Part shown: piece after piece, positions 4,076 through 47,550 of the stretch | How the letters are laid out: each line of letters begins with the position of its first letter | How positions within the stretch are numbered: the first letter of the stretch is position 1 | Source of the DNA: Eutreptiella sp. 'Long Island Sound 2002' | Lineage: Eukaryota; Protista; Euglenida | Direction: 5' to 3' | DNA length: 64,000 bases | Assembly (NCBI GenBank): GCA_964036045.1 | Contig: OZ038378.1 | Location: 168,516,001-168,580,000, forward strand | The notes under the pieces: generated by a model | The model's input: the letters and a program-made list of their open reading frames with translations, nothing else | Told to the model about the DNA's origin: nothing | Database searches by the model: none | Made by a program: the position numbers and the translations under genes

Positions 4076-6493
4076 CTAAAGCGGTGGGTTGCACTGGGCC
4101 TGGATGTCCTCCTGGGTCAGACCGTCACAGAACACCACTTCCATGTCCGGAGGTTCAAAGCACGCGTAGCAGTGTTCCATCAACTTCGATAAATTCGGAC
4201 AGTAGAAGTTGACCAGGTGACCATTATCAAGAGAGCAGTCACCGTCATCACTTGGGCTCGGGCTTGGGCTGTCTATTGGGGGGCTTGAGCTGCTGCCTGG
4301 ACTTGAGACCGTGGGAAGCACTGCAACAACTGATGTATGTGGCACTGTGATGGAGAAACACCCGTGCCCGCCTGGCCCTTCGACTTGACCACCTTTCTCC
4401 AAAATATTGGTTCCGGTACTTTGGCCGCTTGAGTACAAGTACACATTGATAGCGGACGATTGAATGCCACAAGCTTCAGATTGCATGCGTGTGGCAGCAA
4501 CGTGACCGCCATTGGCATCGAATCGGTGCACCCGCAAAAACAGTGCTTCACCGGGATCTGCTTGCGCTGGCACAAGGCCCAGGTTGGCAAACCCATCGGC
4601 GTTGGAAGAAGCATGCACCGACACAATCGCCTTGCTGACACTGGAACCCCAATCCTGCATCTTCACATTTCTGCCCCCGCTGGGGGCGGGGATCTCTGCT
4701 GTGGGACTGTTTTGGGTATCCACAAAAGCCTGACTGGATTCGGAGTATAGCTGCACCTCAGTGTCCTGAATGCTGTTGACCAGTGCCTGCCGATCCTCCG
4801 TTGTCAGGTCAGCCACACTGGCAGATGCCTTTGTCAAAAAACTGGCCAACTTTGTGTTGGGACCAGCATACTTCGACACACATGGGCCCTGAAAACAAAT
4901 TTCAGATGCAGTGTTGTCGGTTGGGCAATCTGCGCCTCCATTGCGTGGTTTGATGGTTGTCCGAGATCGTGTCCGCGTTCCATCTCCACAGGAGGCACTG
5001 CAGGCACTCCAAGCATCCCAAGCCCCCACCACGCAATCTACAGCTTGCGGGGGGGCTGCACAGATCAAATGGTGATTAGCAGCAGATGATAGCCATCCTC
5101 CAGTTACAATGAGGCGGTTGCCAAGGTAGCCTGTACAGTGACCCTGAGGGTAATTCCCAACAACTACAAACGGGAGTGGAAAATCGGACGCACATTTGAA
5201 TAGATCCGACTGGCCACAAGTTGTGGTGGTAAATGGGATGACACGCCCACTGCAGTCGCCAGAACCAGGATAATTACCTGCAGGCTTGCCCCTGGGAATC
5301 CTGCCACATGCACTCACCACACCTTGCAAATCATTTGCATAACTTCCCTTGATGGCATAGAGGAGGTAGCCCTCGTGCTGCATGAACGGCTCTACAACAT
5401 TCACAGTGAATGTGCAGCTTTTGCCTCGGTTGCCCGTTGCATCATTTGCATCGCAACTCACTGTACTGGCGCCCAAACCAAACACACTACCAGATGGTGG
5501 GGTGCACGTCACCGCCACCGAGACGTCCACGTTATCTGTAGCGGTCGGCACTGCATAGGTCACGGTGGCACCGGCTGCTGACATGGCTTCAACTCCAGCA
5601 GTGATGTCGGCTGGACACGATGTCATGGCTGGTGGTGTTGTATCTACAACTTCCAAACCAAACGTACAGCTTGTGCCCACGTTGCCCGCTGCATCCTCTG
5701 CTCTGCAACTCACTGTGCTGGTGCCCAAACCAAACACACTGCCAGATGGTGGCTTGCACGTCACTGCCACAGACACGTCCACGATATCTGTGGCGGTCGG
5801 CACTGCATAGGTCACGGTGGCACCGGCAGCTGACGTGGCCTCAACTGCAGTTATGTCGGCTGGACATGATGTCATGGCTGGTGGTGTTGTATCTACAACT
5901 TCCACGTCGAAGGTGCAGCTTGAGCCCACGTTGCCCGCTGCATCGTCTGCACTTGTGCATGTTACAATATTGGTGCCAAAGGCAAACACACTGCCAGATG
6001 GTGGCTTGCACGTCACTGCCACAGACACGTCCACGATATCTGTGGCGGTCGGCACTGCATAGGTCACGGTGGCACCGGCAGCTGACGTGGCCTCAACTGC
6101 AGTTATGTCGGCTGGACATGATGTCATGGCTGGTGGTGTTGTGTCTACAACTTCCACGTCGAAGGTGCAGCTTGAGCCCACGTTGCCCGCTGCATCGTCT
6201 GCACTGGTGCATGTTACAATATTGGTGCCAAAGGCAAACACACTGCCAGATGGTGGCTTGCACGTCACTGCCACTGGGCCGTCAAAGTTGTCTGTGGCGC
6301 TCGGCGGTGAATAGATCACTTTGGCACCGGCAGCTGACGTGGCCTCAACTGCAGTGGTGCCAGCCCAACACGTGATGGCTGGTGGTGTCGTGTCGGGCAG
6401 ACCAATCGAGACTCGATCAATGAGCCACATATCATATTGCTGGTTCAACTGGTTGGAAAACCTGATGGTCACAGACGGCGCATTTGCACTGAA
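4076..6493 (-). CDS. Segment 5: four HYR domains, Cys-rich domain, TSP1 repeat and C-terminal region
   Basis: DTTPPAMTSCPADITAVEATSAAGATVTYAVPTATD repeats (HYR); DCVVGAWDAWSACSASCGDGTRTRSR (TSP1). Confidence 0.88.
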   Translation of the reverse strand, partial: FSANAPSVTIRFSNQLNQQYDMWLIDRVSIGLPDTTPPAITCWAGTTAVEATSAAGAKVIYSPPSATDNFDGPVAVTCKPPSGSVFAFGTNIVTCTSADDAAGNVGSSCTFDVEVVDTTPPAMTSCPADITAVEATSAAGATVTYAVPTATDIVDVSVAVTCKPPSGSVFAFGTNIVTCTSADDAAGNVGSSCTFDVEVVDTTPPAMTSCPADITAVEATSAAGATVTYAVPTATDIVDVSVAVTCKPPSGSVFGLGTSTVSCRAEDAAGNVGTSCTFGLEVVDTTPPAMTSCPADITAGVEAMSAAGATVTYAVPTATDNVDVSVAVTCTPPSGSVFGLGASTVSCDANDATGNRGKSCTFTVNVVEPFMQHEGYLLYAIKGSYANDLQGVVSACGRIPRGKPAGNYPGSGDCSGRVIPFTTTTCGQSDLFKCASDFPLPFVVVGNYPQGHCTGYLGNRLIVTGGWLSSAANHHLICAAPPQAVDCVVGAWDAWSACSASCGDGTRTRSRTTIKPRNGGADCPTDNTASEICFQGPCVSKYAGPNTKLASFLTKASASVADLTTEDRQALVNSIQDTEVQLYSESSQAFVDTQNSPTAEIPAPSGGRNVKMQDWGSSVSKAIVSVHASSNADGFANLGLVPAQADPGEALFLRVHRFDANGGHVAATRMQSEACGIQSSAINVYLYSSGQSTGTNILEKGGQVEGPGGHGCFSITVPHTSVVAVLPTVSSPGSSSSPPIDSPSPSPSDDGDCSLDNGHLVNFYCPNLSKLMEHCYACFEPPDMEVVFCDGLTQEDIQAQCNPPL
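5390..6395 (-). repeat. Four tandem 252-bp HYR-coding units, the middle two nearly identical
   Basis: Anchor ggtcacggtggcacc recurs at 5558, 5810 and 6062 (period 252 bp). Confidence 0.95.
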
Positions 6494-7850
6494 TCATATC
6501 CTCGCCAAACACCTTGGTGTCCTTGTTTTGAGCTGCAGCTGGAAAGACGACCCCATCCACTCGCACTTCACAGTGTTGCCTGAATTGCTCCGATGTTCGC
6601 GTTGAAAGAATCCTGAAAGCCGATAGGAATCTGAGGTGATAGGCTTGGCCCACAACGAGATCGCCAACGGTCTGCTCGATCCAGGCACGGCGTGGCCATA
6701 TGCGAATATGGTATCGACCATTTCCAGAGTCGAACTGCTCATTGCCATTCGGGACTAAAGCAGCATCGCATCCCTTTCTCTTCCATCCCTTTGGAGGATT
6801 GTTGCACGCTGCAAGATTTTCTCCTTGTCCATCTGCCTCGAAATGTGGATTCACTATGGGCACTCCTTTTGTGCAAAGTTTTCCACCATAAATCCATTTG
6901 CCTCCGTCACCGCATGTGGCAGTGGGTGAACCCCTGTAGCCACTGGCACACGTTGGAATGCAGACGCCACCAAAATCAGTCTGACAGTGGTCGAAAAGAG
7001 TGCCCGTGTTGCTTGGTGGCCCACAGGAAACCGGCTTGCAGGTGCCACCAGTGACCCATTGATGATCTGTTCCACATTTTGCAGTGGGTGAACCAGAATA
7101 GCCATCTGCACATCTTGGCGAGCATACGCCCCCAGAATGGGTTTCACAAGGAGGATGGCCCTCGTACACTACACCAGGTCGCGCGGCTGGTGGTCCACAA
7201 ACGGCTGACTCACAATTGCGTCCAACAAATGTGGGCGGGCAGGTGCAGGAATACTCTCCGGGCCTGTTGCTGCAGACTCCGCCATTCCGGCATGGATTGG
7301 GATCGCACTCGTCGAATGTATCCACATCTTCAGACCCACACGATCCCTTGGTGACCCAATAAACACTTTCCGCTTCACAGGCGTTTCCTGAACCAGATTC
7401 AACAGGATAACATGGATATCCGCCCCAGACACCTTCCAATATCCGCCCATCCACATGTTTGCAGCACTGAGCCTTATCTTGAATGCTCGGGCATCCGCGT
7501 TGATCAGGAAGAATGGTTCTTTTGCTGTCACAATCCAAAAAAGCGGTTTTACTGCTTGCATCCCGGATGGACAGGCGCCTGTAATCAGTGCCATCCTCAC
7601 AAAAATACTCGATTTCCATGTCCTTGTTGCACCAACCAATCGGAGCATCACTGACACCAAAGTCAACAACGTTGATGGACCAGTGGCATGCCAAATTACC
7701 ATCACAACACTTTCTTGCTTCAAGGGTCAGGTCATCACGTACATTCTTGGAGGGACAGGCCGAAGAAACACCACAATTCTTGCCATAAACAGCCGAAATC
7801 ACTCGGATACCTCTGCCTGTAACAGCTTGGGTACACTCACCAGCAATAAT
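6494..7850 (-). CDS. Segment 4: SUEL/Gal-lectin, Cys-rich, EGF, two Sushi-like and galactose-binding-like domain
   Basis: In frame with segment 3 across TGA (TAKCGIDGK*IIAGECT); IRVISAVYGKNCG, DECDPNPCRNGGVC, IVNPHFEADG motifs. Confidence 0.85.
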
Positions 7851-8640
7851 TCACTTCCCATCAATGCCGCATTTGGCAGTGGGTGAGCCCTCGTACCCTG
7901 GGGTACATCTGGGAGAGCACACGCCACCAGAATGCATCTCGCAATCATCGTACCTCACCCCAGGCTGGGCCTGTGGAGCCCCACACACAGCGAATTCACA
8001 ATTGTTGCCTTGGTATACAGTGGTTCCAGTGCTGGGGCACACACACGAGTATCCCATCATCCCGTTGGTGCAGACTCCGCCATTTTGACAAGGATTGGCT
8101 GCACATTCATCAAATTTGTCTTCAGACCCACACGATCCCTTGGTGACCCAATAAACACTTTCCGCTTCACAGGTGTTTCCTGAACCAGATTCAACAGGAT
8201 AACATGGATATCCACCCCAGACACCTTCCAACATCCGCCCATCCACATGTTTGCAGCACTGAGCCTTATCTTTAATGCTCGGGCATCCGTGTTGATCAGG
8301 AAGAATGGCCCGGGTGCAGTCCAAAAAAGCAGTTTTACTGCTTGCATCTTTTACCACGGCATGCCGTGCAAGAATTTCAGTGGCACAGGTGTAAGAGATT
8401 TCAAGGTCCTTTGTGCAATGGCCAACAGGAGCATCACTGACACCAAGCTCAACGACATTGATGGACCAGTGACAAGCAATTTTACCATTACATTTTTTGG
8501 CTGCTGGACTGGTCAAGTCATCGTATGTATTGCATCCACACGACTTTCCATAAGATGCGGAAAGAATTCTGACACCTGAAGCCACGCATGTCAAAGGAGT
8601 GAATGTCCCATCCGTCTGGCAGATGACGTCCCCATTGCCA
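7080..8640 (-). repeat. Tandem duplication of about 792 bp (SUEL-Cys-EGF-Sushi block)
   Basis: ttcagacccacacgatcccttggtgacccaataaacactttccgcttcacagg occurs at 7329 and 8121; flanking protein blocks are paralogous. Outer boundaries approximate. Confidence 0.9.
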
Positions 8641-11600
8641 CTGTATCCCACATCACATTGCACTGGGATCTGCATGCCAGTGGTCCCTTGGATGGATCCT
8701 GATTGAGCCTTGTCTGAGTGGGCTACTGATGTATGTGTGCATGAGTTGGCTGTACATGTCAACGGAGTGAATGTCCCATCCTTCTGGCAGGTGACGTACC
8801 CACTGCCACTGTATCCCACATCACATTGCACTGGGATCTGCATGCCAGTGGTCCCTTGGATGGGTCCTGATTGAGCCTTGTCTGAGTGGGCTACTGATGT
8901 AGGTGTGCATGAGTTGGCTGTACATGTCAACGGAGTGAATGTCCCATCCTTCTGGCAGGTGACGTACCCACTGCCACTGTACCCTGGATCACACGTTACT
9001 GTCACAGAAACACCCCGACCTCCCCAGATCCACGAGGGTCTGTTTGAATGAGGAATTCCTGTTGACTGGCATGGATTTTGTGGGACGGTTGTGCATTTGT
9101 GGGCCACCCACCAGGCCCTAGCATCTGCGGGAGCAAACCCCCAACTTTTCTGAGCGTACGAGACAGCATGCACATTCGATATGCCTTGGCATGAGCAGCT
9201 CCAACCTGAACATTCTGTGCACTGTAAAGACGTGAACATACCCTCCGCTTGGCAAACAACATGACCACTACCACTGTATCCAGAATCACATTGCACCATG
9301 ATGTGCTGTCCAGTGGTACCCCTTATAGACCCAGGTACTCGTTTGTCAGAGTTGGCCACCTGTGTCGGCATGCATGGCTGGGCCACGCACTTCAAGTAGC
9401 TGAAGTAGTAGAAGGTGAAGAATTCATTGGCTTTACAAATTACTTCGCCACTACCACTGTATCCTGGATCACACGTCACCGTGACCTGTTGGCCAATAGT
9501 GCCTGTGATAGAGCCATGCGCACTTTTATCAGAATGTGCCACTTGTGTTGGAAAGCACGAGGCCAGTGTGCATGTCAGACTGGTGAACTTCCCATTGGCT
9601 TGGCAGGTGACGTAGCCACTACCAGTGTACCCTTTATCACAATAGACTGGAATCTTCTGGCCAGTGGTCCCTCTAATGGAATTTGGCTCGCTTTTGTCAG
9701 AGTTGTCCACTTGTGCTTCAGTACATTTCCTCGGTAGGCATACCACAGGATTAAATCTTCCGTTCGGCTGGCAGACAGCAAACCCATAGTGATCATCATA
9801 AGAATTATCCTCTCGAAATGCAGCAGGGTGTCTAATAAATGAAGCACGGTATCCAGGGTTACAATTCACCCGCACCCACTCACCAGTGGTGCCCTTGATG
9901 GACCCTTCTTCACTTTTGTCAGAGTTGGCGACTTGGGTTGACTCGCAGCTTTCAGCAGCGCATGTCATTGATGTGAACAATCCATTAATTTGGCATTCGA
10001 CGGTGCTGCTGCCTCGATACCCTGCATCACAGATCACTTGGACCTTCTGACCAAAGGTACCAGTGATGAACCCCTGGCCACTTTTGTCGGAGTGAGGCAC
10101 CTGTGTTGGCTTGCACGGTTTGGGCTTACATGTCACGTGTGTGAAGTGGGAATTGGCTTGGCAGGTAACATCACCGCCACCAGTGTATCCCGGGTCACAT
10201 GTCACTGTCACTTTCTCAAGAAAGCCGGCGCTGAATTCTTTTCCCCATGCGTCAGAGTTAGCTACCGGCACATTGGTGCAACGTGGTGCGCAGACGTTGG
10301 AACAGCAGACGTTGGAACACCCGCTGTTGTACCGAAAGTTGTTCTCAGTCCGTTCATCCTCCTCCCACGTACTCCATGCCGTGTCAAATCGGTGGCACTG
10401 TCCAGATGCGCTGTCAAAATACCAACGGGACACGCATTCGTCAGTGGTACATCTCTTGACTGGTTTCCGGCATCTGTTGCGCACAGCATCTGAGCAATCC
10501 CACCAAGTAAATCTTCCGTTGGCTTGGCAGATAAAATTGTGGACCTGCTGGGGATCGCCATTACACGTCACTGGTACAACATCACCAGTGCTCCCAGTGA
10601 TAGAATTCCACACTGGATAATCGGAATCCCTGTGGCCTGTTGGCTGGCATGGATTAGGTGTGCATATCATAGAGGTGAATGTTCCATCCGCCTGGCACAT
10701 CACGGTACTGTTGCTGCTGGTGTACCCTTCATCACATTTCACTGTGACAATCTGACCAGTCGTCTCATTGATGGATCCCGGGTCACTTTTGTCGGAGTTG
10801 GCGACCTGCGTCGCTTTGCATGGTTTGCCTACACATGCCACATAAGTGAATCTACGGTCGGGTTGGCACCTCAGCTCGCCCCAATCCACATTAGTCATCC
10901 ACGTCTTCCACGGAGTGAAGCCATATGCCGGGGTGTACCCCTCGTCACAATTCACTGTCACAGACGAACCAGGAAACCCAATAATCGACCCTGGCACCTT
11001 CCGGTCCGAATTAGCCACTTGGGTGACCTCACAGGGACTGGCGTGCATCACTCGAAACGGAAACTGAATCAAGTGCCTTCCGGCAAGGTCATCGATCGGC
11101 ATTCCACCCAACGGCACCCCAGCCTGCGTCAGGTCGACCGTCCACCCCAGACTCCCGGGCAAGGAACCCGGAGCTGTGATCAGGACTCGGAATGTGTATG
11201 CCCCAGGGAGCAGACAGTCACGTTTTGTGATGCGGGTCCCACTGCTCGACGAAGAATAGCTCTCCGGAGGCTCCCCTCTGGCAGGGGTTGCCTCCGGGAT
11301 ATACCACCCAAAGGCACCAGGCCTGGACGGCAGGCTGATTGTGAGTTCAACTTCCTGGCAAGCGCAATCCAAGTGCACCGTCTTGCCGTGGGCTGCTGGA
11401 ATGGAGAGGGTTCTGGCCTCATTGTAGGTGCCACACCTGTACTTGACGTCAATGGAAACGCCATCGCAGGAAACCCCTCCAAGCGCAGGACCGTCGACGA
11501 ACCAAGCGCACGTCACATGGCCATTACACTCCGCGGATAACTGCGGCGTCACATCATTCCCCCTTCCACAGCGTTGCCCATATGTGGCATCCAGCACTTG

Positions 11601-13264
11601 GATTGCATCTGCAATGGCGCAATACTGAGGCCCTGACACGTGGCCCCTGCGTGGCTGCCGTCTCACACCGTACTCCTTCAGGTAACAAGCCGCATCAGAG
11701 GACACGTGTGTCCAAAAGTAACACCAAGCGTTATCTTGACACTCTGCTTGGCACTGCTCCTTGCTGGCGATTTGAGTCTTTGTTGCAATAATCCGGCTTT
11801 CCAAATCAATCTCTTGCTCAGCACAACTACAGTCCATGCACGAGCCACCACAGTCCACTCCCTCCTCATCGCCATTTCGCATCCCGTCGGCGCAAGAAGG
11901 GTCCGAAACGGTGAATGGGTGGACAGTGATGGGGTGGACTGCGTGTAGCAGCAATTTCCCACTGCTATAAATGCTCACCTCCTGGACCGATTCCGCAGAG
12001 GCAGAGAAACGGTGTGTCCAGGGTAACAGGCACTGTCGTTGATGCTGCTGACCTGCAGTCTGATATTCGACGCTTGTGGTCTCCTCGGGTGTCCCGATGG
12101 ACCACTCTGCCACCCCTCTACTGCTATCTGGGCGGGAAACGATGTACACATCCACTTCTGTGCATGTGGCGTGACTGCTGCAGTCGGCTCCAGAGTACCC
12201 ATAGCCGCATGTGCACCCCTCCTCCTTGCACACACCGTGCCCGGAGCATGGGTTACCTGCTCCTCCTGGGCACTCCACACAAATTCCACCAGTGGCCCAA
12301 TCCCCAGAATCCAGGCACGTTGCCGTGGGCCGTCGCGGCACGTTCGGTTGCATCCACCCAGCGGCACAGCGGACGGGACACCGGCCATCGAACATGGTTT
12401 CACAAGGGCCATCGCGGACGGCATTCCTTTGCGCCAGCTCAGAATCCGGCGGGGGACCACACTGGACCGGGCTGCAGGAGCCCTGCATGGTCCACGCCCC
12501 ACTGGGCTCACAAAGGATCACGGGGGAGCCAAGGTACCCCGGCGCACAAGCCACTGGACAGTGGCCCCCGTAGGTGAAGTCGCAGGGCCCTGCCGTGACG
12601 ACGTGGGCAAAGTAGAACTGCTGGCAGTCCTTTGGGGTGCACCGGGCGACAGTCCAGCCACCGTCGTGCCCGCACACGGCAGTGGGGGTGCCGTAGTAGC
12701 CCCGGTCACACGTGACCTCACAGTGCCCGAAATAAGTGGTTTGGCACCGCCCCGGCACCACGACCACCCCTGTCCCCATCACATCCGGGGGCTGGCTATC
12801 CACCTCGTGGCAGTCCGGCCCGGTGTACCCTTCATCACATTGACACACGGGGCGGGCGTCCCGCACCGTACATGACGCGTTGGCAGGACATGCCCCCGCG
12901 CAGGCGTTGGTCTCGCACGTGGGGCCCACCCACGGCCCTGGGCAGGTGCACTGCCCCGCGGGGCCGCAGGTCCCGCCGTTGTGGCAGGGGTTGGGCACGC
13001 ATTGCTCGGGCACGCAGTTCTTGCCGTCCCCGGCGGGGCTGGCAAACCCCGGGTCGCAGGCGCAGCCCCCACCCCCCGCACAATCCGAGTGGGCCCCACA
13101 TGGACAAGGGTCAAGGATCTGGATGGAGTCAATCAGGATATCCCCCTCAACGTCCACGTCTCGTGTGAAGTACAGAGGCCAGAAATGGTCCGAGTAAACG
13201 GTGAACTCGTCGACCACCTTTTTCCAGCCCGCCCCTATAACGTTCGGCAGCGGGTAAAAGAAAT
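7854..13264 (-). CDS. Segment 3: EGF repeats, Sushi/CCP-like repeats, PAN/apple domain and two SUEL/Gal-lectin domains
   Basis: CVPNPCHNGGTC and DECAANPCQNGGVC (EGF); KEQCQAECQDNAWCYFWTHVSSDAACYLK (PAN); IQVLDATYGQRC and VRILSASYGKSC (SUEL); more than 10 repeats C..TQVANSDK..GSI.GTTG..V.V.CD.GY.GSG.V.CQ..G.FT.LTC. Confidence 0.85.
8590..9000 (-). repeat. Near-identical 168-bp Sushi-like coding repeats
   Basis: Anchor aa(c/a)ggagtgaatgtcccatc at 8593, 8761 and 8929 (period 168 bp). Confidence 0.93.
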
Positions 13265-14899
13265 CCCCCCCCCACGGCTCACCTGCAGTGCCTTGTGCCT
13301 GCCACAGACCCAATACACTAGCATATAGCGGTGATTGGGGGTCAACCCGGAGGCGTATTGGTACACCCATCGGGAGTCGCGCAAAAGCAGGGCGGCGTTG
13401 CCTGTGTGCGGGGCCCCACAAATGTACCGCGCGTTCTTCGTAAACGATTCCGGGGCAACGGCCCAGGAGTCTTTAGTCGAACTCCAGTGCCCCGTCCCAA
13501 GCTCGAAACCGCCGTTGCGAAGGCCGGGGTGCGACGTGATCGGATCCCGGATCAAGATGGTCTGATGCCAGCTGGGGTAGTTGCAGTTGCAGAAGGGGTA
13601 GTCACACTCTCCATACTTCCAGAGTTTCCAGGACCGCTCAATCCTCTTGAGAGTTGCATACCCATGCAACTTTGGGTAGGGCGTGTATTCATCGGTATAT
13701 ACACTGATCCGCGACAAAGTAGTCACGGGGGTTGGTTCCCCGGTCACGGCGGGTTCATACGACGCGCCGTACGGCAACTCAATCCTTTCGGGAGGCGTAG
13801 ATAGCCATGGCGAGTCTTTTTGAACCTCGATGGTCTGCGGCCTTGTCAGACAAGCAGCGCCATGCCCGTAATCCACCTTCCAGGTCCTTGTGATGGTCTT
13901 GCTGCACGCTTCGTCGTTTACAGCGGCCACAGAGTCAGAGTACGTCAATGTGATCGGGGCGCCGCAGGGGTCTGAGACCTTTGGGGTCCCAAGGCCGTTA
14001 TTGGGATCCAAATCATGCGACTCTGTGACAGTCCGGTCCGGGGGGAAGTACGTGATAGAGGGCAGGCCGAATCGTGTCACAACAATTTTGCGCCTGACCT
14101 CACTGTAGCCCCCGCATTGCGGACCGTTCCAGGCTCGCAAAGAGAACTGGATGGTCTTGTCGATACAAGTCGGTGTCACGAGCACGGACTTTGGGGGGTC
14201 CACCTTCGCACCAACCTTGCACTGATCATCAAACTCCCAATCATGAATATCACCCTGCAGCACCAGAGGTTTAGAGCAAGAGAGATGCTTCGTCAGTGCC
14301 TTCAGGTCTTTCCATCGCGGTTTGTTGGGGGTGGGGGTGTCCCTCCGGCACTCGTTCGTCACTCCGTGCTGGCTCGCAATCATTTTCTTCGCGGCATCGG
14401 TTGCGAGTTCTCTCACGATGTTGTCCTTGCTGCCCTCGACCGCAGCCTGCGAAGTCAAATCAACCTTCACGTCCAGGGTGTAGCGTCTGACCCCCCCATT
14501 TCCTTGGCCGCCCAAAGTGCCCACCGTCACTTGGACTGGGACCGGTACTGCCGTGGGGTCCGTGCCATGGGGAATCTTTACGTGGGACGGCACTTGGAAA
14601 TCTACCTCAGGCATGAGTTCTGGGCTGTCCTGCAGCTGGAGCAGCTGCTGATTACCAGCCTCCATGTCACGTATGCACTTTTCATCCGACTGGAGCTCTC
14701 TGATCTTGGGTGCGACCTTCTGTTTGAACTTCTCCCGGAATTGATCGTGGCAAGCCGTGTCGTAAACAAGGCTCGTCTTCCCCTCGGACTTTTCCTGGCA
14801 GTGTGTGCTGCATCCAGCAATGCCACATCTCTCGATACAGTCCGCCTCGTACCGCTCCGTGAGCGCGCACCCCACCGCGTCGTTGCCCTTGCTTCTCTC
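13265..14899 (-). CDS. Segment 2: Cys-rich/coiled-coil, Ig/FN3-like, two bacterial-type HYR-like repeats and start of a galactose-binding-like (CBM/DUF642-like) domain
   Basis: In frame with segment 1 after the TAG (TEI*ERSKGNDAVGCAL); repeats of the type PPDRTV...GTPKVSDPC...TYSD...ITRTWKV...QTIEV; GLRNGGFELGTGHW motif. Confidence 0.7.
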
Positions 14900-14902
14900 C
14901 TA

Positions 14903-17900
14903 GATCTCCGTCAAAGAATCCGTCTCACAACTGAATTTGAACCAATTGATTGAGGTGAGACACGAGAGCGCACCGGCCCCAATAGCACCCAAGTCTTTCA
15001 GCTCTTCCGGCAACTCAACTTCGTTGAACACCTCGCGCACCCCGTTGGCTAGCCCCTTGAGGACTGCCCCCGGGGTGCCCGAGATCACATCGAAGAAGTC
15101 CTCCACGCTCTCCACGTTCTGCAGCGTCGCAATTTGACCAAGGAATGCGTTGATGGTGGACTCCAGCGGGGCCAGCAGGGGCCCTACGACGGGGCCCAGC
15201 GCGCGTCGGATGTCGCCGAACACCTTCTTCGCGTCGTTGTGCAGCCCCTCCACTGCTTTGCCGACCTCCTGGGACACGGCCCGCACCCCGGCGTCCACCT
15301 GCCGCTTCGCCCCGGTCACCAGCTCCCCGACCACCCGCCCCCAATCGACGTCCAGCTCAAACTCGCTGTCTGTCAGAGGGTTGGCGATCTTGGCATGGCC
15401 CTGGATGCGGACGACGGGCGTTTTCAAATCAAACTGCAGCGATCTGTCACTTTCATCTGCAACAACGGTCACGAACCCTTGGAACCCCAGCACAAAGATG
15501 TCACAGGTCATCCTCTTTTCCCCGGTTTTTGCAGTGTACGTGTACGTCAGTTCTTTGACATGCACAATCGCGAAACTCAAGTCTCCTATCCCCATCGTGA
15601 AATCATCGGTCTGCCGGCTCCACGTTGCATACACCGAGGCTGAAAACGTACCCCAAAACAAATGCAGCCGGCCTTTGAACTCGAACCCGGCGTCGTTGAC
15701 ATTGACACTGACAGAGCCATATGACCCCAACGGCGGAATGCTCACTGCGGCCTTGATTTCCACCAACACCGTGCTCAGGGATACATCCACAAGGAACCGC
15801 GCCCGGCCCTCCGCCTGGGGGGGGTCCTGATCGTGGTCCAGGCTGCCCCCAAACATCAACAAGCCCGTGATTCCGAAGGGATCCATAAGGGCGTCGATTT
15901 TAAAGCGGGATGGGCTCACTATCAGCTCCAGCGAAACGCCCCAGCCAAAGAGCACCAGCCGCCCGCTGATCTGCAGCCCCGCTGGGACGTGGATGTTGCC
16001 GCCGCCGAAGGAGATTGTTCGGGGGCGCAGCGTGAATGTGATGTAGGCAAAGCACTCCAGGGCAATCTCAGTGGTGACTTCTGAAGGTGGGGATGTGATG
16101 CCGGCACATTGCTTCGTGGTGCGGACGCGGTAGATACCCGACTCTCGGAACGCTTTGGGCAGCTTCTTGAACTGGTCCCCAAGGCCAGTGTGCCCCGCCA
16201 GCATGTTGAGCGCCTGCCCCATCGTTGCCTCCGTGATCACAGCGACGAAGTAGTTTTCGTTGTAGGTGGCCTTGTTCACACCAAGGTACAGGCCGCCCCA
16301 GACGGGCGCCTCGTCCCCTGCCGTAGGGGGATTCGGCTCCTGGCAGCGCAGCCCAAGGCATACCTGCGCCCCAATTTGAAACCCGCTGGGGCCTGCTACA
16401 ACCGCCCAATCCACCGCCAGCATGAGATGGCGGATGTGCAGGAAAGGCAGCCCGAACGCCTGTGCCCACCAGCCCTCCATCTGAATCTTCCCGCGGATGA
16501 TCACTTGTGGCGGAGGCGGGGTGAGTTGAGCAATGACACTCACATCGCCAGAAAAATACAACAGTTTTCGTGACGACACCGTATCACAGTCGTTGACGCA
16601 TACTCTCAACGGCAGGGTGACGCCCACCTGAGCGTCCGTGGACCTGGGACTCCATCTCAGGGTCAGAAACAACCCCATTCCCTTGTTCTCCGCCTTGTCA
16701 ACGATGGCCCAATTCGCTTCCGGGTCAGTGTCCGGTGCACTGCTCACGCTCAGAGTGAGACTCAGAGCACGGGGGAATGTCAGCGTTGCCAAAACCTCCA
16801 GACGCATCCCGGTCAACCCGTTCAGCACGTCACCCAGAATCCCAGTGGCACCGGGTGGCATCAGCAACCCACCCTTGGCTGAGATAGCCAACTGGACTGG
16901 GGTGCCCAAGCTCAAGGTCATTGATATCATGGCGTCCGAGAAGCTGAGATCGAACACCCCATCCAACTTGTTCTCGAGCTCGGGAGCCATTACAGGATCA
17001 ATGCTGTGTGCCAGGCCACCTACCGTAAGCTGATGCACACTCACCGCGGCAGTGAGCGCCGTGCAACTTTTCATGCCGAACGTCGCCGTCCCAAGCACAG
17101 CATTCCTCACAGACGGTTTGCGGCACTGCCCACCACAGAAATTCGCACTGATGCTGCTTTGCGAAATCACCGACTTCAACGTCTGGGCAAGGTTCGCGAG
17201 ATCTTGTTGCGCTTTGGTTCTCTCAGCTGCGGGGGGGATTCCAGGTGGGGTTGGGTCATTGCTTTGCTGGGTTGCAGTCGTTTGGCTAGGACAGGCGGAT
17301 GCGTTGAACGTCCATGCCGATTCCCCCTTGTCGTGGCTGTCCCAAATTGTGACTCCGGCTTCGAAAAGCAGGCTCAGGCCATCCATAAACTTCGCCCGAT
17401 CGTTCTGCCAGACTTCTTTCAACCGCGATGTCACGAGGCTCTTGATCTTGCTTGGATAGTCACGGATCAGCTGCTTAATTTTTTGGAGCGCAGCCTTCGC
17501 GTCCACCGATCTGAGATCGTCGATGGCTGCGAAAACAACACCAAACCCCCCGAATGCAATGCCTTCCATCCAAGCTTCGAAATTGAAATCTCTTTCGCCG
17601 AAGCAGGCCCAGTGCGCGTGTGTGTACAAGATAAACACCTCGGCAACGGGCAACGTGCGAAGTAGCTCAGGAGACGTGATGGAGATGCTGAAAGCATACC
17701 CAGAATAGGTCCCAGCTTCCCGCAGCCACATGAAGCCAAAATCTGCAGAGACTTCAGTCTTGCCGTTCCCTAACTGCGACCAGAAACTCTTCTTCTGGCT
17801 CTGGCTGCCAGTACTACCACCATTGCTGGGGTTGGGATGGGGGCTTGGGGATGGGGCAGGTTGGGATCGAGTGATTCCCAGTTCAAACCCGAAGCCTAGT

Positions 17901-18523
17901 CCGAAGAAAGCTTTGCCTTTGTCCCCAGTGACTCTCCCGGCCACCACTTCAAAATTGATGCCGACTGGCATTTCCCCAGGGCCGATCTTCTTCTTCATGG
18001 ACGGGTGGCTGAACGAGAGGCCCATGGTGGCCAGCCACAAGGAGTTGTCAATGAAATTGCCCTGGCTTGTGTTGTTGGAAGGAGGCGGGGTGCCATCAGA
18101 TGGCAGCGGCGGCTCGCTCGCACTGCAGTCCCCCGATAGAATCGACACATAGGGATCCAGCATCTGGGCCACTTGCTCATATTGGGACGCAGGCTGGGCC
18201 ACAACGTCGTCCAGAAACTTCAACATATTTTCTACGCCCTCCTCTGCTTTTCGCCGGAGGAAATTAGGCAGCCAAGTGATGCTTGCTACGTAGTGTAAAG
18301 CAGTCTGCATGCCTGTCCGGTCCAGGGCCTCCTCCACTCGGGTCACCAGGTCGTCAACCGCAAGAGCTCGGAACTCGTCTACCTGCTCCCTCAGCATTTC
18401 CATGTCAAACAACGAGGTCACCTGAAGAGGCTTGTCAGTGGGCGGGGGGGATTCAGCAACGACCACACCAAGGAGCAGCCAAGCTGCTGTCACCGCCAAC
18501 AAGGCGGCATTCAAGCCGATCAT
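14903..18523 (-). CDS. Segment 1 of giant gene: signal peptide, Gly/aromatic beta-strand-rich region and amphipathic helical region; family not recognised
   Basis: Open frame of about 1,200 codons from Met68 of the listed ORF; alternating hydrophobic beta patterns (e.g. GKIQMEGWWAQAFGLPFLHIRHL) followed by helical VVGELVTGAKRQVDAGVRAVSQEVGKAVEGL. Confidence 0.75.
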
Positions 18524-18764
18524 TGGCACAAACAGAAAATACCAGTATGCTTGCACAAAAAACAAAACTGAGCCAGGAGGTTGAACAGCATATGCACGCC
18601 GAGCGGTTTTCGGCAGTTCAGGTGTGTTGATTTGTGCCGCAGCCCTCGTAACAGACGAAACCCAGTGGCGATACAGGAAATGCAACTGAAGTAAGCTGTC
18701 TGGGCGAGCATATTGATCCAACAACTTCGTGCCTTCAGTACATCAGAGGTGAGCAAGGCAAGTC

Positions 18765-22171: not shown

Positions 22172-23050
22172 TCAAAGTTCCAACAAGGCGCCGTGAGGCG
22201 CCGCCACAGATTGCTCCACCCTCCTGCCCCTCTTCCTGGGATTATCACTGACATCCGTACTGTATTCATCGCTGTCCGCCCACCCTAGCGAGCCCAAACT
22301 CGAAGTTGCTCCGGGTGCACCCTCCTCCCCAAGCAGGCTCCCTGTGCTATGCGAATACCCACTGTCGCTAGCCTCCCCCTCCCCAGATGACATCTCCTCG
22401 AGCCCCAACTCCTCCCACTGCTGCTCAAGGCGGCGGCGTTTCGGGAGGGAGTCCTCATTATACGGATGCTGCAGTCTCCCCTGCTCAGCCATCTTGTCCG
22501 CCTCTTCATTCCCCGCCACCCCTAGATGAGACAGCACCCATCGAACCTGGAGTCCGTCCCCTGCGAGCTCCCGCTCCGCCAGGACCGCCATCCACAGTTC
22601 CTTGTGCTCCACCTCCCTCCCTGAGACCCTCCACTGATGGCGCCGCCACTTACTGGACCACTGTGTGATCCCTTTGAACACATACTCCGAATCTAACACG
22701 ACAATCATGTGTTCCTCCCATCGCCTGCTGCGGACAGCATGCAGGACCCCCCTTAGTTCTGCCCTGCTCACACTTTGCTTTTCTCCCAAAGGGACAAAGT
22801 CAGAACTGTTGCGCAGGGAGCCCGGCCCGTACCAGGCCCCATACCCTGCCTGTGCCCAACCTCTGACCACTTTCGCAGACCCGTCTGTGTAGACGACAGT
22901 CCAATCCTCCCTAGACAAGCTCTCCAGTTCTGCCACCAATTTTGTCTTGTACGCTCCCCATTTTGCCTCCTTCATCTGTTGTTTGTCCACCTGCGGCCCT
23001 CCTCCAACAGTGGTTGGCTGCTGGGGTGGTCCCTGAAAAATCCCCGGCAT
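22172..23050 (-). CDS. Ribonuclease H1-like domain with acidic/basic tail, probably retroelement-derived
   Basis: VYTDGS, SRAELRGV, VLDSEYV, VRWVLSHLGVAGNEEADKMA: all catalytic acidic residues and the His are present; uninterrupted 292-aa frame without introns. Confidence 0.88.
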   Translation of the reverse strand: MPGIFQGPPQQPTTVGGGPQVDKQQMKEAKWGAYKTKLVAELESLSREDWTVVYTDGSAKVVRGWAQAGYGAWYGPGSLRNSSDFVPLGEKQSVSRAELRGVLHAVRSRRWEEHMIVVLDSEYVFKGITQWSSKWRRHQWRVSGREVEHKELWMAVLAERELAGDGLQVRWVLSHLGVAGNEEADKMAEQGRLQHPYNEDSLPKRRRLEQQWEELGLEEMSSGEGEASDSGYSHSTGSLLGEEGAPGATSSLGSLGWADSDEYSTDVSDNPRKRGRRVEQSVAAPHGALLEL

Positions 23051-47200: not shown

Positions 47201-47550
47201 TGCATTGGCCACATGTTAGCACAAGTGTGGAACTGGCGGCAAATAGAAGATCATACTACAATATTGGCGTCGACCAAATAGTCGCTAACGATGTTGGACA
47301 AGTAATCGAAGGTGACCATATTGTAATCTTGGTGGATGTTAAGCACCCCCCTCAAGAACAACACGTTGCAGATTGCAATAAGGGGACACGGCCCATTGAC
47401 ATTCTGACAGATGATTGGAACCGATCTGCCCCGAAATCCGATACGCTTTACCCTGTGAAAAGGCAGCGGTTCGACAGTAAACTACGCATAATTTTTGGCG
47501 TTGAAAAACTTTACGAACCTGTATGTTTTCGCCTCATCGGTTTCCGACAT
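38249..47550 (-). CDS. MINDY1/2: MINDY-1/2 family K48 deubiquitinase (FAM63-like), 10 exons, with MIU-like motif and polyQ tail
   Basis: Phase-consistent GT-AG exons: 47550-47519, 47452-47257, 47099-47063, 46894-46834, 46720-46608, 45111-45020, 44248-44059, 42336-42174, 41471-41103, 38414-(38275 donor or read-on). Peptide shows CQNVNGPCPLIAICNVL, GLDVNVKF, DFEFT...FDLL..RLVHGWLLD, GKLSYNHL, GQLTYHGL, FRNNHFSTL, LYSLVTDVGY, VWEKL..IDGD..FVNSDF, ADRLMALQLMQE. 3' end uncertain. Confidence 0.93.
38536..39005. mobile_element. MITE-like element with 33-bp terminal inverted repeats and subterminal ggcaggtgtc repeats, in a MINDY intron
   Basis: gctgcagccatacctgagcgtaacacctgctga (38536-38568) is the reverse complement, with 2 mismatches, of tcagcaggtgttatgctcaggtatggttgcagc (38973-39005). 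Confidence 0.75.
41140..41420 (-). repeat. CAG-rich polyglutamine tract within MINDY exon 9
   Basis: (ctg)n runs on the plus strand in frame as QQQQQ. Confidence 0.9.
45239..45646. mobile_element. MITE (cccttcgt..aa TIR family) in a MINDY intron
   Basis: ta|cccttcgttaa at 45239 and ttcacgaaggg|tg at 45636-45646; subterminal sequence resembles the 54591-55015 copy; internal perfect 14-bp inverted repeat at 45392-45405/45474-45487. Confidence 0.7.

What the first reader, a model, noticed from the sequence alone, without database searches (positions are those of the whole stretch)
4076..18523. 14.4-kb intronless mega-adhesin hidden as five ORFs in an intron-rich genome
Seen: five ORFs join into one polypeptide of about 4,800 aa with a signal peptide and more than 30 extracellular modules, without any intron, while the neighbouring MINDY gene has nine introns in a short CDS. 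Only four lesions occur and the domains run cleanly across each. Known: HYR, SUEL, EGF, Sushi, PAN and TSP1 are adhesion/lectin modules. Inference: a giant surface, mucilage or prey-capture protein with an architecture I do not recognise, either recently inactivated or mis-assembled.
Basis: partly seen in the sequence, partly recalled or inferred. Interest (0 to 1): 0.75.

Follow-up and report, generated by a model that had tools for sequence, protein, structure and literature searches.

The report
Broken giant secreted adhesin gene, Euglena
This is one 14.4-kb intron-free gene of a Euglena-type alga for a roughly 4,800-residue secreted, lectin-rich surface or matrix protein. As assembled it is cut by two stop codons and two frameshifts, so it is most likely a very young pseudogene, but its front part reveals an undescribed protein module shared by euglenids and diplonemids.

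Summary
Five collinear minus-strand ORFs (window 4076-18523) begin with a signal peptide and carry at least 39 extracellular modules. They are separated only by an in-frame TAG, a frameshift at a G9 run, an in-frame TGA and a second frameshift.

The TGA sits exactly where a Sushi domain needs its conserved Trp, and that frameshift (D) has too little room for an intron, so at least these two are true coding lesions. The TAG lies inside a region that intact homologues span in one ORF. The G9 frameshift could instead be a homopolymer error or a short intron.

The genome is Euglena: 3,309 exact spliced-leader copies, and diplonemid homologues. It keeps other single-exon ORFs open for up to 15,953 aa, so neither intronlessness nor giant size is unique to this locus, and general assembly error is unlikely.

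The best reading is a recently inactivated gene or null allele for a secreted mosaic lectin/adhesion glycoprotein.

The new element is the N-terminal ~1,100 aa. It has no Pfam family, 111 relatives (Diplonema, Rhynchopus, unnamed contigs), and a confident all-beta model resembling only barrel walls.

No transcript evidence could be obtained.

The parts
18443..18523 (-). Start codon (ATG at 18523) and signal-peptide-like N-terminus. A pyrimidine tract followed by AG about 25 nt upstream is a possible spliced-leader acceptor (inference).
14903..18523 (-). Segment 1 (1,207 aa). It has a poorly modelled N-terminal part, an all-beta core, and long C-terminal helices. No Pfam family matches.
15323..17215 (-). 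Conserved all-beta core of the Euglenozoa-specific module (631 aa, about 40 strands). AF2 gives pLDDT 87 and pTM 0.77.
14900..14902 (-). Break A: in-frame TAG in a weakly conserved linker, just before a Cys-rich motif that homologues also have.
13238..14899 (-). Segment 2 (554 aa). It holds a linker, an HYR_4C-like Ig-type unit (about 13805-14059), and the N-terminal half of a DUF642/CBM-like jelly roll (about 13238-13537).
13265..13273 (-). Break B: G9 homopolymer where the two reading frames meet. The frame change must lie within about 13225-13310. A 65-nt GT..AG (13218-13282) is an alternative.
7854..13421 (-). Segment 3 (1,856 aa). Order of modules: EGF cluster (12747-13124), 3 Sushi, EGF, an unknown unit, PAN (11607-11849), SUEL-like (11352-11630), an unknown unit, the main Sushi array (8583-11042) with a Kunitz-like insert (10272-10514), SUEL-like (8307-8624), a Cys-rich unit, EGF, and a Sushi cut by break C.
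7851..7853 (-). Break C: TGA at the position of the conserved Sushi Trp. The sequence reads CGIDGK*IIAGEC, against CGTDHQWVTGGTC and CGDGGKWIYGGKLC in sister units.
6435..7850 (-). Segment 4 (472 aa). It holds SUEL-like (7536-7850), a Cys-rich unit, EGF, 2 further Sushi, and the N-terminal ~145 aa of a DUF642/CBM-like jelly roll (6435-6869). Its first 260 aa are a 71%-identical tandem duplicate of the end of segment 3.
6473..6497 (-). Break D: a +/-1 frameshift, not at a long homopolymer. The room between the last stop of the new frame and the start of its coding-looking sequence is too short for an intron.
4076..6472 (-). Segment 5 (798 aa plus TAG stop at 4076-4078). It holds 4 HYR (5387-6391), an unknown ~130-aa unit, TSP1 (4880-5035), a Ser/Pro-rich tail and a Cys-rich C-terminus. 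There is no TM segment and no hydrophobic C-terminus.

Best explanation
The locus is a single-exon gene of a Euglena genome. Until very recently it encoded one ~4,800-aa secreted glycoprotein.

Layout of the protein, in order:
- a signal peptide;
- a Euglenozoa-specific ~1,100-aa module whose core is a large antiparallel beta-meander;
- HYR_4C-type Ig-like units;
- a long array of carbohydrate- and protein-binding modules: 18 Sushi, EGF, 3 rhamnose/galactose-type SUEL lectins, PAN, 2 DUF642/CBM-like jelly rolls, 4 HYR and TSP1;
- a Ser/Pro-rich tail.

Likely role (inferred). With lectin and CBM modules, no membrane anchor and a mucin-like tail, the intact protein most likely worked as a multivalent glycan-binding component of the secreted coat, mucilage or matrix. 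The N-terminal module would serve as the family's common scaffold or attachment part.

Present state. In this genome the gene is broken. Two lesions are shown: a TGG-to-TGA-type nonsense codon in a Sushi Trp position, and a +/-1 frameshift in a jelly-roll domain. An in-frame TAG and a frameshift at a G9 run are probable further lesions. It is therefore a very young unitary pseudogene or a null allele. At most, the 1,207-aa first segment could still be made.
For: One gene:
- The five ORFs are collinear, with 2 in-frame stops in ~4,800 codons.
- An intact 1,668-aa homologue from another organism aligns over window 13874-18478 straight through the TAG. P0019 and the Rhynchopus protein also align across it.
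- Segment 2 matches the part that follows the module in P0012, P0013 and P0008.
- A Sushi unit is split by the TGA at profile position 49/56.

Functional for most of its history:
- dN/dS is 0.26 between the old duplicate blocks on either side of break C, and 0.42-0.48 among the HYR units.

Secreted:
- The only hydrophobic segment is N-terminal.

Module identities.

Lesions real rather than assembly error:
- C is a substitution and D is not at a long homopolymer.
- The same genome keeps ORFs of 15,953 and 10,439 aa open.
- A 678-kb record in the protein collection carries ORFs 100% identical to segment 3 (1,788 aa) and segment 4 (456 aa). The 456-aa length equals that of the window's 6432..7802 ORF.

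Organism: 3,309 exact copies of the Euglena spliced leader against 0 in the control. The named homologues come from Diplonema papillatum and Rhynchopus euleeides.
Against:
- Word searches with segments 1, 3 and 4 found no transcript-derived near-identical protein. This fits a silent gene but is not proof.
- Break B sits in a G9 run, a classic long-read error site.
- A and B could each be removed by a short GT-AG intron.
- Whether the 678-kb record is independent of this assembly is unknown.
- Segment 1's own ORF was not found in the collection, and I cannot explain that.
- The proposed function is inferred from module content only.
- Domain continuity at B and D rests on weak hits: Pfam E 0.04-0.08 and atlas score 0.89. 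The two jelly-roll candidates are not significantly similar to each other.
Confidence: 0.6

Rival explanations
1. The gene is intact in the organism. The four breaks are consensus or polishing errors, or belong to one haplotype of a polyploid genome, and a full-length ~4,800-aa protein is made.
For: - Break B lies in a G9 homopolymer.
- Only 4 lesions occur in 14.4 kb, and the signs of purifying selection are strong.
- A published E. gracilis assembly was built from noisy PacBio Sequel reads polished with Illumina. Which technology produced the present assembly is unknown.
Against: - C is a base substitution and D is not at a long homopolymer.
- ORFs of up to 15,953 aa stay open in the same assembly. 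If the error rate were below 1 per 48 kb, four errors in 14.4 kb would be very unlikely.
- A second record (678-kb contig) carries identical ORFs for segments 3 and 4.
Confidence: 0.2
2. The locus still works as a shortened gene. Only segment 1 (signal peptide plus the beta module, 1,207 aa) is made, like the 1,198-aa Rhynchopus homologue, while the downstream array decays.
For: - P0009 of Rhynchopus euleeides, from a transcriptome, is 1,198 aa and aligns over residues 23-1136.
- The start codon, signal peptide and upstream pyrimidine-AG are intact.
Against: - The TAG falls about 10 residues before the Cys-rich motif with which the short homologues end, so the product would lack it.
- A premature stop far from the 3' end may trigger decay. 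Nonsense-mediated decay is suggested for Euglena in PMC12501133.
- The downstream part has only three lesions in 10.8 kb, so any such state is very recent.
Confidence: 0.1
3. A and B are short introns rather than lesions (conventional GT-AG, or euglenid nonconventional CAG..CTG type). The gene then has two small introns and only two lesions.
For: - A 65-nt CAG|GTGAGC...AAAAAG| interval restores the frame at B.
- GT-AG intervals of 51-72 nt remove the TAG at A.
- Synthetic 50-bp nonconventional introns are spliced in Euglena (PMC12501133).
Against: - GT..AG pairs that keep the frame are numerous by chance: 106 candidates at A and 39 at B.
- No nonconventional candidate has a good CAG/CTG-flanking stem (at most 8 of 12 pairs).
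- Homologues align through the A region without a gap.
- C and D remain lesions in any case.
Confidence: 0.15
4. The locus is foreign or retro-derived DNA: a processed retrocopy of a multi-exon parent, part of a giant endogenous viral element, or a recent horizontal transfer. That would explain the missing introns.
For: - There are no introns in 14.4 kb, although euglenid genes average about 12 (55,727 genes and 703,976 introns in E. agilis).
- A paralogue on C13 carries a GTAAGT-type intron at the PFLH motif, where this gene is uninterrupted.
Against: - No parent gene exists. The best paralogues are 30-38% identical.
- There is no spliced-leader remnant upstream and no poly(A) after the stop.
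- GC is 50-62% here, against 32-37% for Euglena viral elements.
- The N-terminal module is shared with diplonemids, which points to vertical descent.
- Many other giant single-exon ORFs exist in the genome.
Confidence: 0.05

Closest known systems
Giant mosaic extracellular proteins built of Sushi/CCP, EGF, HYR and lectin modules, such as animal SVEP1-type proteins (my own knowledge)
   Same: A signal peptide followed by long tandem Sushi arrays mixed with EGF and HYR units, and very large size. All of these Pfam families pass their thresholds here.
   Different: This one lacks VWA and pentraxin modules. It adds SUEL lectins, PAN, DUF642/CBM-like units and TSP1. It begins with a 1,100-aa module found only in Euglenozoa, is encoded by one exon, and is broken here. 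There is no sequence relationship beyond the shared modules.
Uncharacterised Euglenozoa proteins: Diplonema papillatum KAJ9452103 and KAJ9450044, Rhynchopus euleeides EP01061_P021826, and unnamed ENA contig proteins (P0007-P0024)
   Same: They share the beta-rich module at 26-33% identity, with E down to 2e-92. Several start with it directly after the N-terminus and continue into HYR_4C-like units, in the same order as segments 1 and 2.
   Different: Their downstream parts differ: none in P0009, PAN in P0014, four tyrosinase domains in P0021. None has the Sushi/SUEL/HYR/TSP1 array. All are annotated 'hypothetical' or carry no name.
Walls of transmembrane beta-barrels (Tom40, VDAC, TamA, BamA) and inverse autotransporter adhesins such as intimin/invasin, as an analogy of layout
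   Same: The core model aligns to barrel walls at Z 10-11 over about 220-230 residues. Inverse autotransporters also place a beta anchor at the N-terminus, followed by Ig-like repeats and a lectin tip (my own knowledge).
   Different: The rmsd is 8-10 A and Foldseek finds nothing at E <= 0.001 with TM <= 0.2, so this is only a common strand arrangement. No eukaryotic machinery is known to insert barrels into the plasma membrane. No membership is claimed.
DUF642 / CBM_4_9 galactose-binding-like jelly rolls
   Same: The two units cut by breaks B and D begin with the NGGFE...W or NPHFE...W type motif. They give weak Pfam hits to the N-terminal halves of CBM_4_9 and HpiC1-like, and atlas neighbours that are all DUF642/CBM clusters.
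   Different: All scores are below the family thresholds, and the two units are not significantly similar to each other.

Membership tests
Sushi/CCP (PF00084) | Profile match above the gathering score, with the four-Cys and conserved-Trp pattern | tested here: met
   E 6.5e-21 and 74.9 bits against a cut-off of 20.7. A self-built profile finds 18 units. The Trp is present in sister units and replaced by TGA in one.
HYR (PF02494) | Profile match above the gathering score | tested here: met
   Four tandem units, E 2.4e-53.
TSP1 (PF00090/PF19028) | Profile match above the gathering score | tested here: met
   43.4 and 50.6 bits against cut-offs of 21.6 and 41.
SUEL / rhamnose-binding lectin (PF02140) | Profile match above the gathering score, with the YG(K/R) and Cys framework | tested here: inconclusive
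   Pfam gives 20.2 bits against a cut-off of 31.4 for one copy and nothing for the other two. A profile of the three copies hits only RBL lectins in the PDB: 5h4s E 3e-4, 2zx0 1e-3, 8suf 2e-3. Sugar binding was not tested.
Kunitz/BPTI (PF00014) | Profile match above the gathering score, with the six-Cys framework; protease inhibition | tested here: inconclusive
   23.6 bits against a cut-off of 21 over profile positions 2-52 of 53. Cys spacing is irregular by eye. Inhibitor activity cannot be tested here.
PAN/Apple (PF00024) | Profile match above the gathering score | tested here: met
   24.4 bits against a cut-off of 21.4, which is marginal.
DUF642 / CBM_4_9 jelly roll | Profile match above the gathering score over the whole domain | tested here: inconclusive
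   CBM_4_9 E 0.075 over profile positions 4-76 of 136. HpiC1-like E 0.041 over positions 3-89 of 174. Atlas score 0.89 to DUF642 clusters. Both units are cut by frameshifts, and no joined sequence was tested.
Processed (retro-)pseudogene | A closely similar multi-exon parent gene, a 5' spliced-leader remnant and a 3' poly(A) tract | tested here: not met
   The best paralogues are 30-38% identical. No spliced-leader match within 3 mismatches occurs in the window. No poly(A) lies within 780 nt after the stop.
Unitary pseudogene / null allele | Premature stops or frameshifts that interrupt conserved domains of an otherwise conserved ORF, and that are real in the organism's DNA | tested here: inconclusive
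   Interruption of conserved sequence is shown for C, room for an intron is lacking at D, and interruption is supported for A. Reality in the DNA rests on indirect arguments. Reads were not available.
Giant endogenous viral element of Euglena | Low GC (32-37%) and Nucleocytoviricota marker genes | tested here: not met
   GC is 50-62% across the locus, compared with Table 1 of PMC12455990. No viral family appeared in the Pfam scans.
Membrane beta-barrel (Omp85/porin/VDAC type) | A closed barrel that superposes at low rmsd, and a family profile match | tested here: not met
   Z is 10-11 but rmsd is 8-10 A. Foldseek TM is <= 0.2 with no E <= 0.001. There is no Pfam match.

The most novel reading that the evidence does not exclude
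The ~650-aa all-beta core at the front of this protein would define a new, Euglenozoa-restricted structural family: a barrel-wall-like or belt-like sheet. It would act as the common anchoring or lipid/pellicle-binding base onto which euglenids and diplonemids graft interchangeable extracellular arrays (lectin/Sushi here, tyrosinase or PAN elsewhere). That would be a eukaryotic functional analogue of inverse-autotransporter adhesins. Together with the other 5,000-16,000-aa single-exon ORFs, it would mark a class of giant surface genes that escape the extreme intron load of euglenid genomes.
Probability: 0.12. Interest if true: 0.75.

Novelty: new variant of a known kind. Interest (0 to 1): 0.4.

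Why it matters
Almost nothing is known about the extracellular proteins of euglenids, that is, their mucilage, coat and substrate adhesion.

This locus shows three things:
- Euglena built very large secreted proteins from modules usually thought of as animal adhesion and complement modules, joined to a lineage-specific beta module that is also present in diplonemids.
- Such genes are single giant exons in genomes where genes carry about a dozen introns on average.
- Automatic ORF or gene calling splits them at a few lesions.

The copy itself is probably dead, which limits its direct importance. The module family (111 relatives, none annotated) and the class of giant single-exon ORFs are the useful leads.

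Tried and rejected
Searches that led nowhere:
- Word search with segment 1 found nothing in the 665-2,117 aa range. PDB sequence search found nothing. The atlas gave only unnamed bacterial clusters at 0.86-0.89.
- Word searches with segments 4 and 3 returned only their own ORFs on a 678-kb contig, plus weak EGF/Sushi proteins. So no transcript evidence was found.
- Two literature searches for such proteins in Euglena or Diplonema found nothing relevant.

Readings rejected:
- Retrocopy. There is no parent, no spliced-leader remnant and no poly(A).
- Giant-virus insertion. The GC content does not fit.
- Stop-codon reassignment of the kind reported in Blastocrithidia (my own knowledge; TGA as Trp, TAG as Glu). 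I considered it because the TGA sits at a Trp position, but only two in-frame stops occur in 4,800 codons.

Tests that were inconclusive:
- The intron rescue scan was uninformative for GT-AG because there were many chance candidates. It found no convincing nonconventional intron.
- I tried to show continuity at B and D in three ways. The two jelly-roll candidates were compared with each other (not significant). Paralogous copies were sought in the genome (none). The PDB was searched by sequence (none).
- Fold searches of the module, as the whole model and as the core alone, gave only generic beta-barrel-wall, ApoB-belt and teneurin-shell resemblances.

In scripts, one junction was read with X at the stop for a local BLAST, and hypothetical splice products were only checked for open frames.

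Full report
WHAT IS THERE

On the minus strand of the window, five ORFs follow one another without any gap:
- 14900-18724 (segment 1)
- 13235-14875 (segment 2)
- 7851-13421 (segment 3)
- 6432-7802 (segment 4)
- 4076-6472 (segment 5)

It opens with MIGLNAALLAVTAAWLLLGVVVA. This is the only hydrophobic 19-mer in the whole locus, so there is a signal peptide but no transmembrane segment and no hydrophobic C-terminus.

From the ATG to the TAG stop at 4076-4078 is 14,448 nt. The window contains no N. The three fixed minus-strand frames over this span hold 53, 79 and 241 stops, while the coding path holds two. This is not a chance arrangement.

THE FOUR BREAKS

Break A is an in-frame TAG at 14900-14902, in the context ..SLTEI*ERSKG...

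Break B is a change of frame. Both frames are open between 13238 and about 13474. A run of nine G at 13265-13273 lies where the coding-looking sequence of one frame hands over to the other.

Break C is an in-frame TGA at 7851-7853. The text reads CGIDGK*IIAGEC, and the sister Sushi units of the next segment read CGTDHQWVTGGTC and CGDGGKWIYGGKLC. A profile built from the locus's own Sushi units finds 18 of them. The one at the end of segment 3 stops at profile position 49 of 56, and its last Cys follows just after the stop. So the stop replaces the conserved Trp codon.

Break D is a frame change. It must lie between the last stop of the new frame (about 6497) and the start of its coding-looking sequence (about 6473). 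That leaves roughly 25 nt, too short for any intron, and it is not at a long homopolymer.

ARE THE FIVE PIECES ONE GENE?

For C the answer is yes, because one domain is cut in two.

For A the evidence comes from homologues:
- An intact 1,668-aa protein of another organism (P0012) aligns collinearly over window 13874-18478, straight through the TAG.
- Read with X at the stop, the junction is also spanned by alignments to P0019 and to the Rhynchopus protein P0009. Both place a Cys-rich motif just after it.
- Segment 2 matches the region that follows the N-terminal module in P0012, P0013, P0008, P0015 and P0016.

For B and D the evidence is weaker:
- In both cases the upstream ORF ends in a unit that gives weak hits to the N-terminal half of jelly-roll families. 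These are CBM_4_9 positions 4-76 of 136 at E 0.075, and HpiC1-like positions 3-89 of 174 at E 0.041.
- The language-model atlas places the unit at D among DUF642/CBM clusters of 172-199 aa, at a score of 0.89.
- The 145 aa before D plus about 25 aa after it, up to the first HYR unit, would make up that length.
- Against this, the two units are not significantly similar to each other. They have no paralogous copies in the genome and no PDB sequence match.

So 'domains run cleanly across each' is shown for one break, supported for a second, and only suggested for two.

COULD THE BREAKS BE INTRONS?

The genome is a Euglena (see below). Euglenids use both GT-AG introns and nonconventional introns. 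The nonconventional type has a 3-nt spacer plus CAG at the 5' end, CTG plus a 5-nt spacer at the 3' end, a purine after the intron, and flanking complementarity. Introns as short as 50 bp are spliced (PMC12501133).

I scanned each junction for intervals of 30-400 nt of either type that would restore one open frame:
- GT..AG pairs that do so are abundant by chance (106, 39, 64 and 21 candidates at A, B, C and D), so they carry no information.
- No nonconventional candidate has more than 8 of 12 possible stem pairs.
- At C and D every candidate deletes parts of recognised modules.
- At A (for example 51-72 nt, 14892-14963) and at B (65 nt, CAG|GTGAGC...AAAAAG|, 13218-13282) a short intron cannot be excluded.

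Whatever A and B are, C and D make the reading frame as assembled non-functional beyond codon ~3,690.

REAL LESIONS OR ASSEMBLY ERRORS?

No reads were available. Three indirect arguments favour real lesions:
- C is a substitution and D is not a homopolymer slip.
- The same assembly keeps single frames open for 15,953, 10,439, 5,993 and 5,511 aa. I confirmed that two of these begin with signal-peptide-like sequences and run on for more than 2,000 aa to the end of the fetched stretch. An indel or stop error rate high enough to put four errors in 14.4 kb would not leave 48 kb intact.
- The protein collection holds ORFs 100% identical to segment 4 (456 aa, the same length as the window's 6432..7802 ORF) and segment 3 (1,788 aa). 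Both are on a 678,115-bp record, whereas the window lies on a sequence of more than 168 Mb. Other hits show that chromosome-sized records are kept whole in that collection (52 Mb). So this is a different record, though it may stem from the same data.

Two points count against:
- B is at a G9 run.
- I cannot explain why segment 1's own ORF was not returned by its word search.

AGE AND HISTORY

The end of segment 3 and the start of segment 4 are an old tandem duplicate: SUEL-like, Cys-rich unit, EGF, Sushi. They are 72% identical in protein, with dS 0.86 and dN/dS 0.26. The four HYR units give dN/dS of 0.42-0.48.

Both sides of break C were therefore under purifying selection for most of their history. 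Four lesions in 14.4 kb then imply a very recent loss. This is my inference from the rarity of stop-creating and frame-shifting changes.

A 397-nt fragment of segment 1, 96% identical, lies 2.3 Mb away.

ORGANISM

The evidence points to a Euglena gracilis-like euglenid:
- The genome is 2.28 Gb in 2,317 sequences.
The reversed control occurs 0 times.
- The only named relatives of segment 1 are from diplonemids.
- Flow cytometry puts E. gracilis at 2.14-2.34 Gb (PMC11252322).

The published 46-chromosome assembly has a largest chromosome of 121 Mb, so this is another assembly or a close relative. It is not human DNA.

NOT A RETROCOPY, NOT VIRAL

Retrocopy:
- No closely similar parent exists. The best paralogues are 30-38% identical.
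- There is no spliced-leader remnant in the window.
- There is no poly(A) after the stop.

Viral origin:
- Euglena's giant endogenous viral elements have 32-37% GC (PMC12455990). This locus has 50-62%.

INTRONS

The window's MINDY gene lies at 42,230-47,457 on the same strand. It matches its Pfam profile in four separate pieces, so it has introns. I did not verify nine.

E. agilis has 703,976 introns in 55,727 genes. A paralogue of segment 1 on C13 is interrupted at the conserved PFLH motif by a 13.7-kb interval. That interval starts with GTAAGT and contains a retroelement ORF. This gene is uninterrupted at that point.

So the absence of introns is real and notable. It is shared, however, with the other giant ORFs of the genome. 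Those carry Sushi, VWA, or SRCR plus HYR modules.

THE N-TERMINAL MODULE

Sequence searches on segment 1:
- It has no Pfam family at E 0.01, no PDB sequence relative, and no word-search hit.
- The exhaustive HMMER search found 111 proteins at E <= 1e-3. Of these, 23 are at E <= 1e-30. They are 26-33% identical and 108-4,415 aa long.
- Named members are Diplonema papillatum KAJ9452103 and KAJ9450044, and a Rhynchopus euleeides transcript.
- In several members (P0009, P0012, P0013) the module starts near residue 8-30, as it does here. In the giants it is internal.
- Downstream parts vary: HYR_4C-like units (P0008, P0016), PAN (P0014), four tyrosinase domains (P0021), or nothing.

Structure prediction:
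- AlphaFold2 with 32 homologues modelled residues ~440-1050 at pLDDT around 90. The first 430 residues were poor, and long helices followed residue 1065.
- The core alone, with 38 homologues, gave pLDDT 87 and pTM 0.77, with about 40 strands in an up-and-down arrangement.
- Foldseek found nothing at E <= 0.001, with TM <= 0.2.
- The exhaustive aligner's best hits are walls of membrane beta-barrels (Tom40, VDAC, TamA, BamA). They score Z 10-11 but at rmsd 8-10 A, close to the background of Z 7-8 quoted by the tool.
- The whole-model search also gave ApoB-100 belt and teneurin-shell hits at very low TM.

I conclude that this is a large curved antiparallel sheet without a specific known relative. 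Its function is unknown.

HOW IT MOST LIKELY WORKED

The following is inference from content. A signal peptide sends the protein into the secretory pathway. With no anchor, it is released or held by protein or glycan contacts.

It carries many modules that bind sugars:
- three SUEL/RBL-type units, whose joint profile hits only rhamnose-binding lectins in the PDB;
- two DUF642/CBM-like units;
- PAN.

It also carries modules that bind proteins (18 Sushi, EGF, HYR, TSP1, and a Kunitz-like unit at 23.6 bits against a cut-off of 21), plus a Ser/Pro-rich tail.

This is the make-up of a multivalent cross-linker of a glycan-rich coat, mucilage or substrate. The family-wide N-terminal module would be the constant part, a scaffold or attachment, and the array the variable part. 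None of this was tested.

NOVELTY AND SCORE

Giant mosaic adhesion or lectin proteins are a known kind, and a broken copy is of limited interest in itself.

What is new:
- the Euglenozoa-specific module family, with no annotation anywhere I could search;
- its pairing with animal-type modules;
- the class of single-exon giants in an intron-laden genome.

I rate the finding as a new variant of a known kind, with interest 0.4.

LIMITS

- No reads or transcripts were available.
- The spliced-leader probe came from memory and is validated only by its copy number against the control.

Noticed in passing
G000 genome-wide, e.g. C1:29492-29515 (L023) and C1:113346-113369 (L024): The 24-nt Euglena spliced-leader sequence occurs 3,309 times exactly, on both strands and dispersed along the chromosome, with 0 hits in the reversed control. 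These could be dispersed SL-RNA genes or the 5' ends of retroposed mRNAs.
   Followed up: no
G000:C11:6482263 (L025), C10:65150610 (L026), C8:79685035 (L027): Other giant single open frames of 15,953, 10,439 and 1,831 aa. The two largest open with similar signal-peptide-like starts (..WIVWFLF..). They carry Sushi, Sushi plus VWA, and five SRCR plus HYR respectively. Giant single-exon secreted mosaic genes are a class in this genome.
   Followed up: partly
G000:C1986:8946-9917: A MINDY deubiquitinase copy matches the whole Pfam profile (positions 2-250) in one 348-aa open frame on a small unplaced contig. The window's MINDY gene (42,230-47,457) is split into at least four exons. This copy could be a retrocopy or a contaminant.
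   Followed up: no
G000:C13:22726808-22743810 (L015-L017): A paralogue of the N-terminal module is split by a 13.7-kb interval that begins with GTAAGT and contains a retroelement with a 1,047-aa RT-like ORF. Its second part carries one in-frame TAG.
   Followed up: partly
G000:C1:166204797-166205198 (L002): An isolated 397-nt fragment, 96% identical to window 16616-17012 (the middle of segment 1), lies 2.3 Mb away. It is also present as a 138-aa ORF in the protein library (P0010).
   Followed up: partly
protein P0021 (4,415 aa, unnamed ENA contig of 2.7 Mb): A homologue joins the same beta module (residues 1278-2010) to four tyrosinase domains (E 1.3e-54). This hints that the module carries enzymatic as well as adhesive cargo.
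   Followed up: no
window 22175-23050 (-): A 292-aa ORF with an RNase H domain (E 5.5e-24), probably part of a retroelement, lies 3.6 kb upstream of the gene's start.
   Followed up: no
G000:C9:30228653-30234896 (L018-L020): A more distant paralogous locus has a Sushi array (38% identical to segment 3, residues 1276-1634) and an HYR unit in long open frames (1,595 and 723 aa). It contains one in-frame TGA.
   Followed up: no
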